From NCBI GenBank assembly GCA_010909165.1, contig VJWM01000007.1, forward strand, positions 310,001 through 374,000: a stretch of DNA of 64,000 bases, read 5' to 3'. This document shows, piece by piece, positions 3,219-12,658 of the stretch (its first letter is position 1; every line of letters starts with the position of its first letter). Made by a program: the position numbers and the translations under genes. This DNA comes from Anthoceros angustus (Eukaryota; Plantae; Anthocerotophyta). Under the pieces are notes generated by a model. The model ran no database searches and had not been told where the DNA came from. It saw nothing but the letters and a program-made list of their open reading frames with translations.

Positions 3219-4850
3219 TCAGGTGGAAATGATCCGAACGTCCGGCACATGGACAGGGAAGTTGTGAATGCAGGCAGCCCAGGGGCCAGCTTTGGGAGGC
3301 TGGATGGTGCGCAGGGCTCGCCAGACCGAACTGTTGCACTTGAAGCCACTGCCGAAGGCGATCTGCCACACCCTGTCCCCGCGCCGCACCCGCCCCTTGG
3401 CCTCCGTGTAGGCCAGCTCGTACCAGATGGAGGAGGAGGAGGTGTTGCCGAACCTGTACAGGGTCATCCGCGAGGCCTCCACGTGCTCCTTGGACAGCTG
3501 CAGGTTCTTCTCCAGCTCATCGATAACCGCCCGGCCGCCCGCGTGAATGCAAAAATGCTCAAAGGCGAGCTTGAAGTCGGGAATGTAAGGCTTGAGCTTG
3601 GCATTGAAGAGCTTCCTGGCAACCAGGGTAGCGAAGAAGAGAATCTGCTCCGAGAGCGGCAGCACGAGCGGTCCTAGAGTAGTGATGTTGGTCTTGAGCG
3701 CGTCGCCGGCAATGGCCATGAGATCCTTGGAGAGCGACACCCCGAGCTTCCCTTCCTCGTCCTCCTCCTGGTACACGCAGCGGAAGCACTTGCTATCCGC
3801 GCCCTTGTGCGTCCTCACCGTGTGCACCAGCTGGTACTTCGATCTCCGCCGGTCGGAGGCCTTGTTGGAGAGCAGAATTGCCACGCCCCCAACCCGGAAC
3901 AGGCAGTTGGGAATGAGCATGGAGCGGCGGTTCCCGAAGTACCAGTTCTGCGTGATGTTCTCCGTGCTCACCACGATGGCGTAGCTGCTCCGGTGCACCT
4001 GCAGCAAATCCTTGGCCAGATCCACCGAGATGACATTGGCGCTGCACCCCATTCCCCCCAGATTGTAGCTCCGGATGTTGCCCCGCATCCGGTACTTGTT
4101 GACGATCATGGCCGACAGCGAGGGCGTGGGATTGAAGAGGCTGCAATTCACCACCAGCACGCCGATGTCCTTGGGCGTCACCTTGGTCTGCGCGAAGAGC
4201 TGGTCCAGCGCCCCGAACATGACCGCCTCCGCCTCGGCGCGCGCCTCCGCCATGTTGATGGTGACCGGCACGCTGTGCAGCCCCGGCGGCAGGTACGTCT
4301 CCTCGCTCAGCCCCGAGCGCTCCAGGATCTTGCGCTGGAACTCCAGATTCTTTGGGTCGAACAGGCCCACCATCTCGGATCGCTTGATGAAGAGGCCGAA
4401 GGGCACCTTGAGCTCGTCCGGCGGCAGGTAGCAGGCGTAGTCGACGCAGTACACGGGCCGCGCCCGCGACATGAAGTACACCGTCCCCCCGAACACCAGC
4501 AATGCGGAGCACCCCAGCACGCTCACCAGGTTGAATTGCAGCTTCACCCACAGCCCCCACATCTCCTCCCTCCCCACCCGCGTCATCTCCAGCCCCACCC
4601 CCAGCACCAGCGGCACCACCAGCAGCGTCACCAGATGCGTGATCAGGTAGTGGTACCCCAGTTTCACATACTTGAGATTCACAGACTGCACGAAATCCGG
4701 CAGCCTCGCCCTCCGCGTCCCGCCGCCGCCGCCGCCATGGTGCCCATTCCCGTTCCCGTTCCACGCATTCCCGTTCCCGTTCATCAGCGCCGCCCTCTCG
4801 TTCTCGCTCTCCCTCTCCCTCTCCTTCTCCCGCGCCCGCTCCTCCTCCAT
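3219..4850 (-). CDS. KCS: 3-ketoacyl-CoA synthase (FAE1/KCS very-long-chain fatty acid condensing enzyme), intronless, ~543 aa
   Basis: ORF contains [21 protein letters not shown], two N-terminal hydrophobic segments, catalytic Cys in NLGGMGCSA, His in [15 protein letters not shown] and Asn in RFGNTSSSS. The ORF track starts at TTG 4895; the first ATG is at 4850. Confidence 0.97.
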
Positions 4851-7068
4851 CTCCGCTGCTCCTCCACACCTCCCACCTCCCACCTCCTTCCCCAAATCCC
4901 CTCTGCCCGGCTCTCAGCTCAGCTCAGAGCTCAGAGCCCAGAGCCCAGAGCTCCGAGCTCTGCTCGGGGAACAGGAGAAATGCGCGGGCACCACCAGCTC
5001 CCGCACTGCCGCAGCGCAGCGGGCAGGGCTGAGCTGCAGGCAGTTAAGCCCGTCGACAGACAGACTGACTGGAGAGAGACGGCCTGGCCCCATCGCCCTA
5101 GGTTTCACTCCCTGCCAAGTGCCAGCGCTGCAAGCCTGCCACGAACGAGAGTGCAATTCCCGTTTTACTGCTGCACCTGCAGTGTGGCGCGCCACGCTCC
5201 AGTCACCCGGCAGCCTCCGGTCGTTTTGACATGACCATTTCTGCCTCCCTTTCCACTCATGTGCACTGATGACTCCATGGCGGATGGTATAAATGCTTTT
5301 CTGCTTCCCGTCTGCACCGCCGGATACAAGCTTCCTGCAGGCTGCGAGTTTCTAAACCCTACGTCCCCGGGCGCTGTTTCTGCCTTTACAGCCTTGGCTG
5401 CCGCCTCGAGACCCCCGTCGGCGCCTCTTCCCGCCGACGTTGTCGGCATCCGGTACTCGGCTGCCAGCAACATCGGACAGCAGCTCCGAATATTCCTCCG
5501 CGCTTGCGAACGGCGAGGAAGAGGTGCTGCCCTGCCGCTGCCCCTGCCGCTGCCCGTGCCCCTGCCGGGATTTCCCCTTTCTCGTCGCCGGCTGGGCCTT
5601 GACCGTTTCACCCTCCTCGTCGCTGTCGGGCCCCGGCATCTCAGGGTCGCTGTCCAGCGCGGGCTCCATTAGCTCGCCGTCCGCTTCGGACTCCGGTTCC
5701 GATTCGTCGTCGCTGTGATTGCGGACTCTGGAATCGCGGCCGTCGTCGCGCCTCAGGACTGCGTCCAGTTTGTCGTAGTCGAACTCGCCGTCGCTGCTGT
5801 TGTTGTCGTCGTCCTCGTCGTCATCGGCCGAGTCCATGTCGGCACCCTCGTCCCGCTCCAGCAACGCCTCCACTTCCTCGTTGTCGCTGTCGTCTTGATC
5901 ACCGACGTCGTCGTCGTTCGTGATGACAGTGATGTCGTCCTCTCCTCTCCTCTCCTTCTCCTGCGCTCCTCCTCCATCTCCGCTGCTCCTCCACACCTCC
6001 CACCTCCCACCTCCTTCCCCAAATCCCTCTGCCCGGCTCTCAGCTCAGCTCAGAGCCAGAGCCAGAGCTCAGAGCTCTCTGCTCGGGGAACAGGAGAAAT
6101 GCGCGGGCACCACCAGCTCCCGCACTGCCGCAGCGCAGCGGGCAGGGCTGAGCTGCAGGCAGTTAAGCCCGTCGACAGACAGACTGACTGGAGAGAGACG
6201 GCCTGGCCCCATCGCCCTAGGTTTCACTCCCTGCCAAGTGCCAGCGCTGCAAGCCTGCCACGAACGAGAGTGCAATTCCCGTTTTACTGCTGCACCTGCA
6301 GTGTGGCGCGCCACGCTCCAGTCACCCGGGCAGCCTCCGGTCGTTTTGACATGACCATTTCTGCCTCCCTTTCCACTCATGTGCACTGATGACTCCCATG
6401 GCGGATGGTATAAATGCTTTTCTGCTTCCCCGTCTGCACCGCCGGATACAAGCTTCCTGCAGGCTGCGAGTTTCTAAACCCTACGTCCCCGGGCGCTGTT
6501 TCTGCCTTTACAGCCTTGGCTGCCGCCTCGAGACCCCCGTCGGCGCTTCCCGCCGACGTTGTCGGCATCCGGTACTCGGCTGCCAGCAACATCGGACAGC
6601 AGCTCCGAATATTCCTCCGCGCTTGCGAACGGCGAGGAAGAGGTGCTGCCTGCCGCTGCCCCTGCCGCTGCCCGTGCCCCTGCCGCTGCCCCTGCCGGGA
6701 TTTCCCTTTCTCGTCGCCGGCTGGGCCTTGACCGTTTCACCCTCCTCGTCGCTGTCGGGCCCCGGCATCTCAGGGTCGCTGTCCAGCGCAGGCTCCATTA
6801 GCTCGCCGTCCGCTTCGGACTCGGTTCCGATTCGTCGTCGCTGTGATTGCGGACTCTGGAATCGCGGCCGTCGTCGCGCCTCAGGACTGCGTCCAGTTTG
6901 TCGTAGTCGAACTCGCCGTCGCTGCTGTTGTTGTCGTCGTCCTCGTCGTCATCGGCCGAGTCCATGTCGGCACCCTCGTCCCGCTCCAGCAACGCCTCCA
7001 CTTCCTCGTTGTCGCTGTCGTCTTGATCACCGACGTCGTCGTCGTTCGTGATGACAGTGATGTCGTCC
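4821..7068. repeat. Tandem duplication of ~1.12 kb (copy 1 ~4821-5940, copy 2 ~5952-7068) spanning the KCS 5' end/upstream region and the NOC1 3' exon
   Basis: Near-identical blocks, e.g. cctcctccatctccgctgctcctccacacctccc at ~4841 and ~5968, and gatgacagtgatgtcgtcc at ~5922 and ~7050. The junction lies in a CTCCT-rich tract. The differences I noticed are mostly 1-bp homopolymer indels. Confidence 0.95.
5352..5940 (-). pseudogene. Duplicated orphan copy of the NOC1 C-terminal acidic exon
   Basis: ORF 5352-5996 encodes DDITVITNDDDVGDQDDSDNEE...SSSPFASAEEYSELL...RGRRV*. This matches the NOC1 tail but is disconnected from the upstream exons. Confidence 0.8.
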
Positions 7069-10000
7069 TCCTCCTCATCGTCTTGCTTTTGTTTCTTCCG
7101 AGATTTGCCCTTCAAGGAGGCCTTTGCCTGATAGAATTTGTGGAACACCACATCTTCGGGTGCGACATCCGCCTCCGCCATGGACGAGAACTGGGCTCCC
7201 ACTGGAAGCGTCGAGGCAGACTCCAACTGCGACAAAGTACCCAAGCACAGGTCACGCCAACTACTTCCTCATTCCACACATTTCAATCTGTTCCGGTGGA
7301 CTGCTGTTTTTGGCGACAGCATTGTGCGACTGATCAAAGACGACAGCCATGTGGGGGGACGAGCACTCACCGTCTGTGATGGATTGGAGGTGGACAACCC
7401 ATGCCATGTGCCTCCCTCCTTGCCTTTCCGGGCCTTCGGCTTCTTCTCTGCAAACCGATCCAGAAACACACCGAGAGCAAAATCTTGCAACGGGTCTCCT
7501 GAGTAGAGCACGTTTGAGCCAGAGAGCAGAGTTCGGGCCATAGCTGCCACTGATGGATGCACATGAACGCTCAAGGATGTAAGCTCCCACCAACACGTCT
7601 GATCTGCGTTACTGCGCACAGCCACCACACAACAAACGTTACTGACTCGCCAAATAGTCTACACGCTCACAGTCGTTACTACCTGTGAAACACTTCCATG
7701 ATACCATCATACAGGGTAGCGAAGATCCACATACCAGTAAGAAGGCTCTCGAAGAAGAGGGTTGTAAGCGTGCGTCTCCACTCGCACCTTTCCTTTCCCA
7801 TCAACGGGGCCCGCAGAAGTAGGTAGAAGCTGGCTATTGCGCAAGCCATCTCCCACCCCGGAAGTGACTTCACCCTTCCCTCTCTTGCTCCCTGAAGATC
7901 GCCGTTTCTTGGGGTGTTCCAGTGAGTCATCCGAACTAGCGTCATCTTCTTCGGAGTAATCAAAGTTTGCACGCTCCATATCTTCTGCTTCTGAGCCAGA
8001 ATTCTCATCCCCGTTGCCACCACGTGAGGCTGCATCATCGCCTTCACTTGACTTGCTGCTTTGCTGATCACGACGTTGCAAGTCTTTCGTTGCAGCTGCA
8101 CCATCCTCGTTATCATCCAGAACATCAACAAAGTGCTCGTCCTCCTCGTCGTTACTCTCCGGTTGAAGTATTGCATGCCTGGAGACATAGCCCCATCAGA
8201 TCAGCCAGTTTGGGCTTTCAAGCGGCATAAAATGCCTGCATAACTTCCCAAAATACCAGCACAACGGCATGGATGCTTACCATAGACTAGGTCGTCCTTT
8301 AAGAACTTCAGAAACAATCAACAAAGACCCACAAGCATATTGAGGCGGCTGCTGCATCGAGACCTGCAAAACCCAGCTCCTCAATCCACCTGCACGTTTT
8401 TTGTCAACATGTAGCTGATCGGATAAACACATAGGTGGGATCAGGGAACCGACCTGAAGCAAACGCTTCACAAACGCAGCAACCCGCTTTGAATTGATGT
8501 CAGACTTTATCGCCTTGAACATGAGACCTATGAACATCTCCACCTGCACGACACAAAGTTTATTCTCTGGAGAAGGAGCCATCTAGAGTATCTCAAATCA
8601 TATCCGCAGTCTTGAGTGGACCCTAACAGAGATGGATTCCACAAGCACAACTGACTATCTGCAAAAGAGTGAGGCATGCCACCTGACCTTTGAGGACTTG
8701 AAAAGCCCAGGCATTAGAAGAACGGCATAGAGCGCACGGTAGAAGCGGTCACTCATTGCCAAATTCTTGGACAACAGCTGATGAATTAGTATAAGGGCTT
8801 GCACCCCAATATTCAAATTCTCGGAGTGCACCTTTCCAGTAAACAAGCGATGTTTAACAATCAGGCCCCACGTCACACTTTTGTAGCAATATGAATAACC
8901 ACATCAACCAAAAAACAATTCGAAATGAAAATTACCAGCCGGAAAAGAAGAGGAGTATGCGATTCCACAACCCCATCCACCTCACCGGCGGCAACAAATG
9001 GGAAAGCTCTGTTGATACCCTGCAAAGCGTTACCGAATACATCATTAAATACTCCCACCTCCAGGGCTCTTCACACACCGGCACACACAAAAGAACTAGC
9101 AGATAGATAGACAAAAAAGACACACAATCAAGGCAAGTCCTGTACATCTCTGCTGGGATACAGCCTCCAAAGACGAAGCCCTGCCTACCGTAAGCAAGGC
9201 TGAAAGAAGCCGAGAATCTACTTCCGTTGGCCCATCCCTATCAGAACCTCCATTCTTCTTGTCCTTCTTGTTGTGCTTCCCTTTCACCTTTCCTTTCTGT
9301 TTGGATGTGGCTGCAGCTTGAGTTTGCTCCGTGGTAAGTGTCTGGTATGGATAACAATACGTAAGATATCTCCCTTTTGAATAGGAGACTTGAAAATGCG
9401 CAGCCAAAGTTGGTAAAATGCTCTCCTGCAAATTCAATCTCTCTCAAACTTACCTTGAACATGGCAAAGTACAAATCAACTAGACGTCTAGCAAGCTTTG
9501 GTCCGTCTCCTCTATTACCAAGGATGATTTGATTCAAGAAAACTACCTGCAAGCAAAGTTGACAAACTTGGATAGAAGCCCAAACACAATAAACATAATG
9601 CACAAAGAGCTATCATCCCAGTGAACCAAACGAATGACAAGGGTCATTGCGCATGTGCGCAGACAGATGCAGCTGCCACTTGGCTAAATCGTGGTGCCAT
9701 CCTACAGAGTGGCTGACATTTGGAAACATATAATCAGAGCAGTACCGCATAGTATCTTGCTCGCAAACCCACATGTGGTCGGAAAACAAAGGTGTCTACC
9801 TCGTCAATAACAACTCCCTGCTCATAAAGGTTAAAGAAAATCGTCAGCAATTACACTAGAAAGCAAGTACAATATCACGGTCGGAGAGAAGATCTGCGGC
9901 TCACAACAGCAGTACTGTCATCTACTGAACAGGATAGACATGAAGCATCTCGTACCTTCATGTTTGGGTGTTCAGAAAGAAGACATGAGAGCATATAGCT

Positions 10001-11814
10001 GGCATTAGAGGCCGTCTTCCTTTCTGGATCTCCAAGCTGGTTCAGGAAAGTAGAGAGAACCCCATGACAAAGTTTCTCGTGGAACTGTGTGAGAACTGAC
10101 ATTCCAGCACAGCAAGGCAAAGTCATTTTCGTCCAGCACATCACTATGTATGCCATTACCTTGTTCACTAAGGCTGACAGCAATCTCCTTTCTTGCTCAG
10201 GTTTTCCCTTCAGAAGGTCGTACACAGTCTGCAACATATCAGGGACAGATAGCATTACAATGTGTGGCAGGCACTCGACCTGCAAACGTACATTCACTTG
10301 TCTCAAACAAGATAAACAGAATAGCAGTTCCTGTAATAGGCGCTCACCCTAACTGCTTTCTCCTTCAGTATGGGCAGCGTATCCTTGGCAGCTTCTTCCA
10401 GAGTACTTACAAACTTGTCATACCTACGCTCATGCCACCACAAAAGTGCAGACAAAAAATGGACGGTGAGGAAGAAAACAGGCTGAAAAAGATATGGACA
10501 ACGAGACTGCTTGGGCAAGCAGGATCCATAACAAAGGCCACCCTCCCATGTGAGAGGTATGCAGAAAGACCAACCTACGCTTCAGAGAGTCTTCCCAGCA
10601 CCAATAAAGTAGCAAATCCTTCCCCTCCTTGGTTGCTGGCAAGGATGATAGCGGCTGTTGTGACAAGTATTTCAGCTTCCGCCCCGGCAGTAGACTGCAA
10701 GAGAACCACCATAAGAACAAAGCTTCAAGCAGCATATACGTCAAGGTACAGGGCAGCAGAAATTTCCTGGGCAACGCTTACGTACTTAGTAAGAAAGAGC
10801 TCCTTCAAAGCCAGAATGCCTGTGACAGCGTGTCGTTTACCTCCTTTTGAAGTCACCATCCCTGAAAGACACATCATTGCCTCTTATTACAAGATTTATC
10901 CACAGCAAAGGCTTGAATCCGGCAGTAAAAGGCTTCTGTAACGCACCTAGCAATGCGTCCAGACTTCGCAAATTCGCTATAGGATTATCCTGCAGCAGAA
11001 CAGTCATGGCAGCGACCTTGTCGGCTGATGTTCCGAACTTGCTTGCCTTGGCCACCCAACGTCTGTCACTATCCTTATCCTGGGACCTGGCATGATCAGA
11101 GGCTGCCTTTTCCAGCAGCTTATCCCCCTCCACCTTTTTTTCCTGCACCAACTTTTCCCATTCGCTCCGGTCTCCACCTTGAGCCGGCTGACTTGAACCA
11201 GCAATCCAGGCAATCCGTTCAGCTGCAGCGGCCGCAGCTTCGTACCAGAGGGACGAGGAGAATTGGCGAACCCTGGATACGCTCTTGTCGGTGTCGGTTG
11301 TCTTGCCCCTTTTCGGCCCTCTCTCGGCCTCCACGAAGGGAGATGCCCGTTTCCGGTCCTTGCGCATACTTCCATGCTGCGGGTCCGTGTCGGCATCGGA
11401 TTTGGCCTTGTTGCTGCGAGCTTGTGTCTGGACGGTTCCCTGCTGCTGTCTTCCAGCATGAGATTTGCCCTTGTTTCCGGGAGCTTGAGTCTCGACGGAT
11501 CCCTGCTGCCTCTGCCCCTTGTCAAAGTGGGGTTTTCCCTTGTTCCCCCGAGCTTGAGTGGGGGCAGCATCCAGCCTAGTAGAATCATCAGCAGGCAGTA
11601 TTTTGGCTTCCTTCTCCTTCTGCTTCTTCTTATGCTTGGGAGCAATGGGCCCGGACTTCCGAAAGTCGGAATCGTCGAACCCATCAAAGCCAGCTCCAGG
11701 AACTAGCCCCAAACTAGCTGCAAAAGAGGCGACTTCAGCCTGCAAACTCTCATCATTGACCACCTTCTTCTTAGCGGCAGGGGCCCGAGCAGGGTCACTC
11801 GTCTGGGCCGCCAT
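6474..11814 (-). CDS. NOC1: Nucleolar complex protein NOC1/MAK21/CEBPZ (CBF domain; Arabidopsis SWA2/EDA25-like), multi-exon; last exon frameshifted as assembled
   Basis: Exons encode SKFGTSADKVAAMTVLLQDNPIANLRSLDALL, LKGKPEQERRLLSALVNK-LGDPERKTASNASYMLSCLLSEHPNMK, NLNIGVQALILIHQLLSKNLAMSDRFYRALY, FIGLMFKAIKSDINSKRVAAFVKRLLQ and an acidic C-terminus ending in the FASAEEY motif. ATG at 11814; stop at ~6474. An apparent 1-bp deletion lies near 6820 relative to the duplicate copy. Confidence 0.93.
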
Positions 11815-11948
11815 AACCCGCTCCGCTGGTGGACGAGGCGGTCAACTGCCTGGGTTTAAGGCTGGCTGAATAGAGGCGGAAGTTAGGGTTTAAGCCTTTC
11901 CTCCCTCCCGGAAACGCCAAATATTGCATCTTCCAATTTGGTCCAGCT
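11815..11948. promoter_or_regulatory. 134-bp bidirectional promoter between NOC1 and the LSm10-like gene, containing a telo-box
   Basis: Divergent ATGs at 11814 (-) and 11949 (+). TTAGGGTTT (telo-box, reverse complement AAACCCTAA) at 11883-11891. Telo-boxes are established features of plant ribosome-biogenesis and RNA-processing promoters. Confidence 0.7.
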
Positions 11949-12658
11949 ATGGAGGAGGAAGGTGCAGTCTTGGGCATTCCGGAGCCGGTTGGCGAGGCTG
12001 AGACTGTGTCCGGTGCTAGGCAAACGCCAACGCGGAAGCCCAAGATCCGGCTGAGGCGATCTGAAAAGGGATTGGTGTGTTTGATCCAAGCCTTGATGGG
12101 TATGCAAGTCATTGTGGAGCTGCGGAAGGACGTGACAATCTCCGGAGTTTTGGAAGAATGCGATGACGCCATGAAGTATTATTCCACTGCTGCCCCAATA
12201 CTTTGTGGGTCCGTTTCCTCGCTATACCATTTGTGTCAATTACATTGTTCCGTGCCTGCAGTGTCCTGATCAAGGATGCCACTACGGAAGATGTGGAGGT
12301 AAGTGTCATGCTTGACGCTCCTCCTCACCCTATCCTGCCACGCACCGTGTACTTCAGTTGACCTGGTGGTGTCCGGCAGGGCGTCCGAAATTCGCTGCCT
12401 ATGGTTTTTGTGAGGGGAAGCAACATTCGGTTTGTGCACATTCCAAAGACCGTGGCTGTATCGGAGGCTATAGAAGCGAGGGTGAGTCCACTTCCCCAAG
12501 AAGCACGCTGTCTGTGCGGGCTGGTAGATAACTCATATTGCCTGTTGCAGCGGTTGATGCTGGATAAAGCAGCGCATGCCTACCTTGGCGGCAGTGGACA
12601 AGCCAATGCGAGTGCGGCCAGGTCGTCTGGCACTGGGAAAGGTTTCCAGAATGAGTAG
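11949..12658 (+). CDS. LSM10: Sm-like protein most similar to U7 snRNP-specific LSm10, 4 exons (11949-12175, 12262-12298, 12380-12481, 12551-12658), ~157 aa
   Basis: GT-AG splicing gives an in-frame 474-nt CDS. It encodes SEKGLVCLIQALMGMQVIVELRKDVTISGVLEECDDAMNVLIKDATT (Sm1) and MVFVRGSNIRFVHIPKTVAVSEAIE (Sm2). These recall human LSm10 (SENSLIILLQGLQG...MN; LFVTGRNVRYVHIP) better than SmD1, SmD3 or LSm2. Confidence 0.8.

What the first reader, a model, noticed from the sequence alone, without database searches (positions are those of the whole stretch)
11949..12658. LSm10-like gene in a land plant: hint of a U7-type snRNP or a repurposed Sm ring
Seen in sequence: an intact 4-exon Sm-fold gene whose Sm1/Sm2 residues (SEKGLVCLIQALMG, RFVHIP) match LSm10. 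Established: LSm10 and LSm11 replace SmD1/SmD2 in the U7 snRNP that processes non-polyadenylated replication-dependent histone mRNAs in animals, whereas flowering-plant histone mRNAs are polyadenylated. Inference: this lineage may retain a U7-like particle, or may use LSm10 in an undescribed heteroheptamer on a different small RNA.
Basis: partly seen in the sequence, partly recalled or inferred. Interest (0 to 1): 0.72.

Follow-up and report, generated by a model that had tools for sequence, protein, structure and literature searches.

The report
LSm10 gene in a non-flowering plant
This is an intact plant copy of LSm10, the small protein that in animals helps build the U7 particle that trims histone messages. 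Such copies are already recorded in mosses, ferns and conifers, so the gene is real but not new, and its job in plants is still untested.

Summary
Window 11949-12658 (+) carries a clean four-exon GT-AG gene for a 157-aa Sm-fold protein.

Its closest relatives are a conserved land-plant family:
- It occurs in ferns, a lycophyte, mosses and a conifer; no flowering plant appeared among the hits.
- The Physcomitrium member is already named "U7 snRNA-associated Sm-like protein LSm10" in nr.
- All three intron positions match the Diphasiastrum gene.

Four checks point to LSm10:
- A plants-only profile hits human LSm10 (6v4x_C) best in the PDB: 61 bits, against 50 for LSm2, 46 for SmD3, 45 for LSm4 and 33 for SmD1.
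- An animal-only LSm10 profile scores the window protein at 68.6 bits, against 22-43 for SmD3-like proteins.
- Foldseek's two best matches to a confident model of a proxy orthologue are human U7 snRNP chain C, and all four such chains are in the top five.
- The window protein has the LSm10-type C-terminal helix and no RG tail.

The gene is therefore an LSm10 orthologue (about 0.9).

Its role in a U7-type ring is inferred only.

An October 2026 preprint already reports LSM10 and LSM11 in land plants. Unchecked notes from this scan record LSM11, an SLBP-domain gene and unknown Sm-site small RNAs elsewhere in the same genome. This is a new member of a known kind, of modest interest.

The parts
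11949..12175 (+). Exon 1. It holds the start codon, a lineage-specific N-terminal extension of about 35 aa with the basic patch RKPKIRLRR, the N-terminal helix, and Sm1 up to ..CDDAM plus two bases of the Asn codon.
   Evidence: Searches give the frame and the GT donor at 12176. Pfam LSM at residues 46-75; alignment to LSm10 profiles and members.
12176..12261 (+). Intron 1, 86 nt, GT-AG, phase 2, inside the Asn codon of the Sm1 'MN' motif.
   Evidence: The Diphasiastrum gene L002 has an intron at the same position.
12262..12298 (+). Exon 2, 37 nt: the end of Sm1 and strand beta-3 (N)VLIKDATTEDVE.
   Evidence: Alignment with the plant family.
12299..12379 (+). Intron 2, 81 nt, GT-AG, phase 0.
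   Evidence: L002 has an intron at the same position.
12380..12481 (+). Exon 3: the Sm2 motif (VFVRGSNIRFVHIP) and the start of the C-terminal helix.
   Evidence: Pfam LSM positions 49-65; best PDB match is human LSm10 6v4x_C.
12482..12550 (+). Intron 3, 69 nt, GT-AG, phase 0. It is in frame and stop-free.
   Evidence: L002 has an intron at the same position.
12551..12658 (+). Exon 4: the rest of the C-terminal helix (RLMLDKAAHAYLGG), a short Gly/Ser-rich tail with no RG repeats, and the stop codon TAG.
   Evidence: The helix and the GG(K/S)G motif align with human LSm10 ..NFGGKG through the proxy P0001.
11815..11948 (.). A 134-bp spacer between the start codons of this gene and the divergent CBF/Mak21-family gene. 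It is a probable shared bidirectional promoter and 5' UTR region.
   Evidence: ORF 10837-11814 on the minus strand. CBF domain further down that strand. The promoter function is inferred, not shown.

Best explanation
The gene encodes the orthologue of LSm10, the SmD1-like Sm protein that in animals, together with LSm11, replaces SmD1 and SmD2 in the heptameric Sm ring of the U7 snRNP. It belongs to a conserved family kept in non-flowering land plants: this genome, mosses, a lycophyte, ferns and a conifer. The most likely mechanism is that the protein takes the SmD1 position in a seven-membered ring with LSm11, SmB, SmD3, SmE, SmF and SmG. That ring would sit on a small U7-type RNA built as a 5' guide, a non-canonical Sm site and a 3' hairpin, and would serve 3'-end cleavage of replication-dependent histone pre-mRNAs. 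What is shown here: gene integrity, the Sm fold, closest kinship to LSm10, and conservation across land plants. What is inferred from the animal system and from co-occurrence reported by others: the ring partners, the RNA partner and the histone substrate. My confidence in orthology is about 0.9. My confidence in the U7-type function is about 0.55.
For: The gene model is clean, and all three intron positions are identical in the Diphasiastrum orthologue. A deep search with the exon 3-4 read-through found full-length plant orthologues. The proxy P0001 hits human LSm10 6v4x_C best in the PDB, at 59.9 bits and E 2e-15 over residues 8-110, including the C-terminal helix and the GGKG motif; the next hit is LSm4 at 43.6 bits. 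A plants-only profile (A2) scores LSm10 at 61.3 bits, LSm2 at 50.1, SmD3 at 46.3, LSm4 at 45.4 and SmD1 at 32.6. Beyond plants, the named hits of that profile are insect 'U7 snRNA-associated Sm-like protein LSm10' and one unnamed fish protein, at E 3e-11 to 5e-7, plus a single SmD3 at 7e-5. The Physcomitrium member already carries the LSm10 name in nr. An animal-only LSm10 HMM scores the joined window protein at 68.6 bits, against 22-43 bits for SmD3-like proteins. In the tree the window protein is sister to all other land-plant members (SH-aLRT 92). It lies inside a 77-row clade that holds every named LSm10 and is separated from the SmD3-like rows by a 99* branch. The window protein keeps 36 of the 42 columns that are invariant in the plant family. 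An AlphaFold model of P0001 with the 76-row alignment reaches pLDDT 84.6. Foldseek's two best matches are human U7 snRNP chain C, and all four such chains (9nh5_C, 9n96_C, 6v4x_C, 9nb1_C) rank in the top five, with S. pombe LSm4 third. The ESM Atlas puts two LSm10 clusters nearest to P0011. The C-terminus has no RG/GR repeats, unlike SmD1 (read from the sequence). A preprint reports LSM10 and LSM11 together in land plants, SLBP in mosses and seed plants, and histone stem-loop features in bryophytes. Unchecked scan notes record an LSM11 gene and an SLBP-domain gene in this same genome.
Against: The margin of LSm10 over LSm2, SmD3 and LSm4 is only 11-16 bits for plant queries, and the Foldseek and Atlas margins are small. 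The tree had only SmD3-like rows as an outgroup; no SmD1, SmD2, LSm2 or LSm4 sequences were available as files. Exon 1 alone does not reach human LSm10 in the PDB search. No U7 RNA, histone gene or histone stem-loop lies in the window. No plant U7 snRNA or U7-dependent histone processing has been shown experimentally in any paper I could read. Older literature holds that higher plants lack this pathway.
Confidence: 0.6

Rival explanations
1. It is a true LSm10-family protein that has been repurposed in land plants. With LSm11 it would form a ring on a different small RNA, or on a family of them, with a target other than histone pre-mRNA.
For: Flowering-plant histone mRNAs are polyadenylated (established knowledge). 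No plant U7 is known. Unchecked scan notes describe arrays of snRNA-promoter-driven, Sm-site small RNA genes of unknown family in this genome, some with swapped 5' domains.
Against: The same genome is noted to hold an SLBP-domain gene. The preprint reports histone stem-loop features in bryophytes. That is the expected setting for the canonical function. Nothing here points to a non-histone target.
Confidence: 0.2
2. It is a fast-evolving plant-specific paralogue of SmD3, LSm4, LSm2 or SmD1 that only resembles LSm10 and is not orthologous to it.
For: The bit-score margins of LSm10 over LSm2, SmD3 and LSm4 are modest. Exon 1 alone hits LSm4/LSm2 weakly. The Atlas score for SmD3 (0.92) nearly equals that for LSm10 (0.93).
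Against: LSm10 is the top match in every independent test. The match is collinear over the full length, including the LSm10-type C-terminal helix and Gly motif. Related sequences form a continuum from plants through unnamed eukaryotes to named animal LSm10.
Confidence: 0.07
3. It is a decaying or unexpressed relic in this genome, with no function.
For: No expression data could be obtained for this copy. It has an unusual N-terminal extension.
Against: The frame is open across four exons with canonical splice sites. It retains 36 of 42 family-invariant residues and 11 of 15 near-invariant ones, and most changes are conservative. Intron positions are conserved. In other plants the CDS lies uninterrupted on contigs of about 1 kb, which are most simply transcripts.
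Confidence: 0.05

Closest known systems
Human LSm10 (U7 snRNA-associated Sm-like protein; PDB 6V4X, 9NH5 and 9N96, chain C)
   Same: It has the Sm fold with an N-terminal helix, Sm1 (..D.aMN..) and Sm2 (..RG.N[IV]R[FY]VHIP..). It has a C-terminal helix followed by a GG-K/S-G motif and no RG tail. It is the best PDB sequence match for the plant family and among the top fold matches (ranks 1, 2, 4 and 5).
   Different: Identity is only about 31-33% in the Foldseek alignments of the proxy P0001. The window protein has a roughly 35-aa N-terminal extension. It has Ser where the other plant members have Arg and human LSm10 has His before the Gly of strand beta-2 (SG, RG, HG). Its partner RNA and its function are untested in plants.
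Physcomitrium patens protein named 'U7 snRNA-associated Sm-like protein LSm10' in nr (P0017), and its fern, lycophyte and conifer homologues (P0014, P0015, P0026, P0019)
   Same: They belong to the same family. Identity is 50-57%, 36 of 42 invariant columns are kept, and the Diphasiastrum gene has identical intron positions.
   Different: The window copy branches outside all of them. It is 157 aa long against about 120-133 aa, because of its longer N-terminus.
SmD1 (the spliceosomal Sm core protein that LSm10 replaces)
   Same: It has the same subfamily architecture and is presumed to occupy the same ring position.
   Different: The sequence match is much weaker: 32.6 bits against 61.3 for LSm10 with the plant profile. 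The window protein also lacks SmD1's C-terminal RG/GR repeat tail.

Membership tests
LSm10 (U7 snRNP-specific Sm-like protein) | Sm fold with Sm1 and Sm2 motifs | tested here: met
   Pfam LSM matches exon 1 and exon 3. The orthologues carry PF01423. The AlphaFold model of proxy P0001 shows a helix, five strands and a C-terminal helix at pLDDT 84.6.
LSm10 (U7 snRNP-specific Sm-like protein) | Closer to LSm10 than to any other Sm/LSm paralogue, in both directions | tested here: met
   A plants-only profile has human LSm10 as its top PDB hit, at 61.3 bits against at most 50.1 for any other. An animal-only LSm10 HMM scores the window protein at 68.6 bits, against 22-43 for SmD3-like proteins. Exon 3 alone also has LSm10 as its top hit. 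Foldseek ranks LSm10 chains 1, 2, 4 and 5. Caveat: no tree with all paralogues could be built.
LSm10 (U7 snRNP-specific Sm-like protein) | SmD1-like but without the C-terminal RG/GR (symmetric dimethylarginine) tail | tested here: met
   The C-terminus reads ..AYLGGSGQANASAARSSGTGKGFQNE and has no RG/GR repeats. The defining feature itself is taken from established knowledge of SmD1 and LSm10.
LSm10 (U7 snRNP-specific Sm-like protein) | Co-occurrence with its ring partner LSm11 in the same genome | not tested
   This rests only on an unchecked scan note (s1-267924) and on the preprint's general statement for land plants.
LSm10 (U7 snRNP-specific Sm-like protein) | Assembly on U7 snRNA through the non-canonical Sm site | not testable with these tools
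   The window has no U7 (Rfam), no U7-type Sm site and no significant snRNA USE element (one 1-mismatch match, fewer than chance expects). Testing this needs the whole genome and RNA immunoprecipitation.
LSm10 (U7 snRNP-specific Sm-like protein) | Required for 3'-end cleavage of replication-dependent histone pre-mRNA | not testable with these tools
   The window has no histone gene. Testing this needs genetics and 3'-end mapping.
Canonical SmD1, SmD3, LSm2 or LSm4 | Strong, family-specific similarity to the animal, fungal or algal protein of that name | tested here: not met
   With the plant profile, LSm2 scores 50.1 bits, SmD3 46.3 (including Chlamydomonas 8xi2_a), LSm4 45.4 and SmD1 32.6 (including Chlamydomonas 8xi2_c). 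All are below LSm10. Exon 1 gives no alignment with a protein named SmD3.

The most novel reading that the evidence does not exclude
Non-flowering land plants may still run a complete U7-type machine. In this reading LSm10 (this gene) and LSm11 assemble on the unclassified Sm-site small RNAs noted elsewhere in this genome. Those RNAs have the U7 layout: a variable 5' part, an Sm site and a 3' hairpin. Their swapped 5' domains would act as guides that direct cleavage of different histone pre-mRNAs, or of other pre-mRNAs. That would make a plant family of programmable U7-like RNAs.
Probability: 0.2. Interest if true: 0.8.

Novelty: new member of a known kind. Interest (0 to 1): 0.33.

Why it matters
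Textbook accounts treat U7-dependent, non-polyadenylated histone mRNA processing as an animal trait that plants lack. This gene adds one more deep-branching land-plant lineage to those that keep the U7-specific Sm protein. The family's apparent absence from flowering plants fits loss of the pathway on the line to angiosperms. The gene alone does not show that the pathway works in plants. Together with the LSM11, SLBP-domain and unknown Sm-site RNA genes noted in the same genome, it makes the question directly testable in a transformable bryophyte.

Tried and rejected
- **Word search on exon 1.** I queried ORF 11949-12266, scored on residues 1-75. It found one candidate and no hit. This part shares too few exact 5-mers even with true orthologues.
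- **PDB search with exon 1 alone.** It gave only weak LSm4/LSm2 matches, so it is not decisive.
- **AlphaFold with the 12-row plant alignment.** It gave pLDDT 47 and was unusable. I repeated it with 76 rows.
- **Rfam on the whole window.** There was nothing at gathering thresholds. At E<=1 there were three sub-threshold matches (a flavivirus xrRNA over intron 2, SCARNA7 and SorX), which I take as chance.
- **Motif scans of the window.** I scanned for the plant snRNA USE, the animal U7 Sm site and core histone motifs. Nothing was found beyond chance.
- **Unavailable papers.** Lopez & Samuelsson 2008 (PMC2151031) is not held. The preprint's supplements are not held.
- The joined 157-aa protein was never sent to any database tool. 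Searches used exons by reference, one stop-free read-through of exon 3, intron 3 and exon 4, and full-length orthologues as proxies. The joined protein was built only inside scripts from window coordinates and compared locally with proteins already fetched.
- **Tree with all paralogues.** A tree including SmD1, SmD2, LSm2 and LSm4 could not be made. No such sequences were available as files, and I did not type any in.
- **dN/dS.** I did not attempt it. At 50-57% protein identity, synonymous sites are saturated.

Full report
**Observation**

The stretch 11949-12658 on the + strand holds a four-exon gene.
- The exons are 11949-12175, 12262-12298, 12380-12481 and 12551-12658.
- The three introns are GT-AG and 86, 81 and 69 nt long.
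- The joined frame is 474 nt, giving 157 aa.
- Pfam's LSM model matches exon 1 (residues 46-75, E 1.9e-4) and exon 3 (E 4.9e-3). Each is below the gathering score only because introns split the domain.

**How the searches were done**

I searched three kinds of query:
- exons, given by reference;
- one natural stop-free read-through (window:12380-12655:+, which is exon 3, the in-frame intron 3 and exon 4);
- full-length orthologues returned by the tools, used as proxies.

The joined protein was assembled only inside scripts from window coordinates. It was compared locally with sequences already fetched.

**Relatives**

A word search with exon 1 found nothing. The exhaustive representative search with the exon 3-4 read-through gave nine hits, among them the full-length 126-aa protein P0001. 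Searches from P0001 and from a 12-row plant alignment (A2) recovered a conserved family:
- ferns: Adiantum and Ceratopteris;
- a lycophyte: Diphasiastrum;
- mosses: Physcomitrium and Ceratodon;
- a conifer: Cryptomeria.

No flowering plant appeared among 108 hits, although angiosperm proteomes dominate public plant data. This absence rests on a word-indexed search and is suggestive, not proven. The Physcomitrium protein already carries the nr name "U7 snRNA-associated Sm-like protein LSm10".

The window protein compares with this family as follows:
- It matches at 126-147 bits.
- It is 50-57% identical.
- It keeps 36 of 42 invariant columns and 11 of 15 near-invariant ones.
- All three intron positions and phases coincide with those of the Diphasiastrum gene L002.
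- In Physcomitrium and one other plant the CDS lies uninterrupted on contigs of about 1 kb. These are most simply transcripts.

**Which Sm protein is it?**

- *PDB sequence search.* Exon 3 alone has human LSm10 (6v4x_C) as its best hit. P0001 hits LSm10 at 59.9 bits over its full length, including the C-terminal helix and GGKG motif, against 43.6 bits for LSm4.
- *Plants-only profile.* A2 scores LSm10 at 61.3 bits, LSm2 at 50.1, SmD3 at 46.3, LSm4 at 45.4 and SmD1 at 32.6. The Chlamydomonas SmD3 and SmD1 chains are among these.
- *Named hits beyond plants.* These are insect LSm10 and one unnamed fish protein at E 3e-11 to 5e-7. Only one SmD3 appears, at 7e-5.
- *Reverse direction.* An HMM of 15 animal proteins (14 named LSm10 and the fish protein) scores the window protein at 68.6 bits over residues 39-122. 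SmD3-like proteins reach 22-43 bits.
- *Exon 1.* It aligns with the LSm10-clade protein P0039 at E 9e-10 and not at all with a protein named SmD3.
- *Tree.* The window protein is sister to all other land-plant members (SH-aLRT 92). It lies inside a clade of 77 rows that holds every named LSm10 and is split from the SmD3-like rows by a 99* branch.
- *Fold.* An AlphaFold model of P0001 built with 76 rows reaches pLDDT 84.6. It shows the Sm fold plus a C-terminal helix. Foldseek's two best matches are human U7 snRNP chain C, and all four such chains rank in the top five, with S. pombe LSm4 third. They also give some of the longest alignments, 87-102 columns.
- *ESM Atlas.* The nearest clusters to P0011 are two LSm10 clusters.
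- *C-terminus.* It has no RG repeats, unlike SmD1.

Three caveats apply:
- The margins over LSm2, SmD3 and LSm4 are moderate.
- The outgroup held only SmD3-like rows.
- The invariance of RFVHIP in alignment A3 is partly an artefact, because hits were collected through shared 5-mers. Human LSm10 reads RYVHIP.

I put orthology to LSm10 at about 0.9.

**Function**

In animals LSm10 and LSm11 replace SmD1 and SmD2 in the Sm ring of the U7 snRNP, which guides cleavage of histone pre-mRNAs (established knowledge). Nothing in the window bears on this. It has no histone gene, no U7 or histone stem-loop, and no significant snRNA USE or U7 Sm site.

Outside support comes from two sources:
- A preprint of October 2026 reports LSM10 and LSM11 homologues in land plants, SLBP in mosses and seed plants, and histone stem-loop features in bryophytes and gymnosperms.
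- Unchecked notes of this scan record, elsewhere in the same genome, an LSM11 gene (called a hornwort copy), an SLBP-domain gene, and arrays of Sm-site small RNA genes of unknown family.

I did not test any of those notes. The U7-type role is therefore inferred, at about 0.55. A repurposed ring is the main rival.

**Novelty**

LSm10 in land plants is already in databases and in a preprint, and LSm10 outside animals has been described before, for example in Physarum. This copy is a further member from a deep land-plant branch. It has a lineage-specific N-terminal extension of about 35 aa. The scan has also found its presumed partner LSM11 on other DNA of the same genome.

**Surroundings**

The gene sits head to head with a CBF/Mak21-family gene. 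Their start codons are 134 bp apart. A single-exon FAE1/KCS gene lies at 3222-4895 on the minus strand.

Noticed in passing
window 5000-11814 (-), first exon ORF 10837-11814, CBF domain piece 7272-7628: A CBF/Mak21-family (NOC1-like ribosome-biogenesis) gene lies head to head with the LSm10 gene. The two start codons are only 134 bp apart, which suggests a shared bidirectional promoter. The arrangement is not seen around the Diphasiastrum orthologue (L002).
   Followed up: partly
window 12482-12550: Intron 3 (69 nt) is in frame and free of stop codons. If retained, it would insert 23 residues into the C-terminal helix rather than truncate the protein. Whether retention happens is unknown.
   Followed up: no
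window 11949-12060: This copy has an N-terminal extension of about 35 aa, acidic at first and then the basic patch RKPKIRLRR. The other plant LSm10 proteins start MG(R/K)R.. just before the Sm fold and lack it. The patch is a possible nuclear localisation signal.
   Followed up: partly
window 3222-4895 (-): A single-exon FAE1/3-ketoacyl-CoA synthase (KCS) gene, Pfam FAE1_CUT1_RppA at E 2.5e-139. It is an ordinary plant gene.
   Followed up: partly
public protein P0009 (267 aa): A public protein model joins an unrelated N-terminal part of about 190 aa to the exon 2-4 part of a plant LSm10. It is either a mis-predicted gene or a real fusion in another plant.
   Followed up: no
window 12294-12382 (+): A sub-threshold Rfam match to an insect flavivirus xrRNA (29.3 bits against a gathering score of 50, E 0.035) covers intron 2. 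I take it as chance.
   Followed up: no
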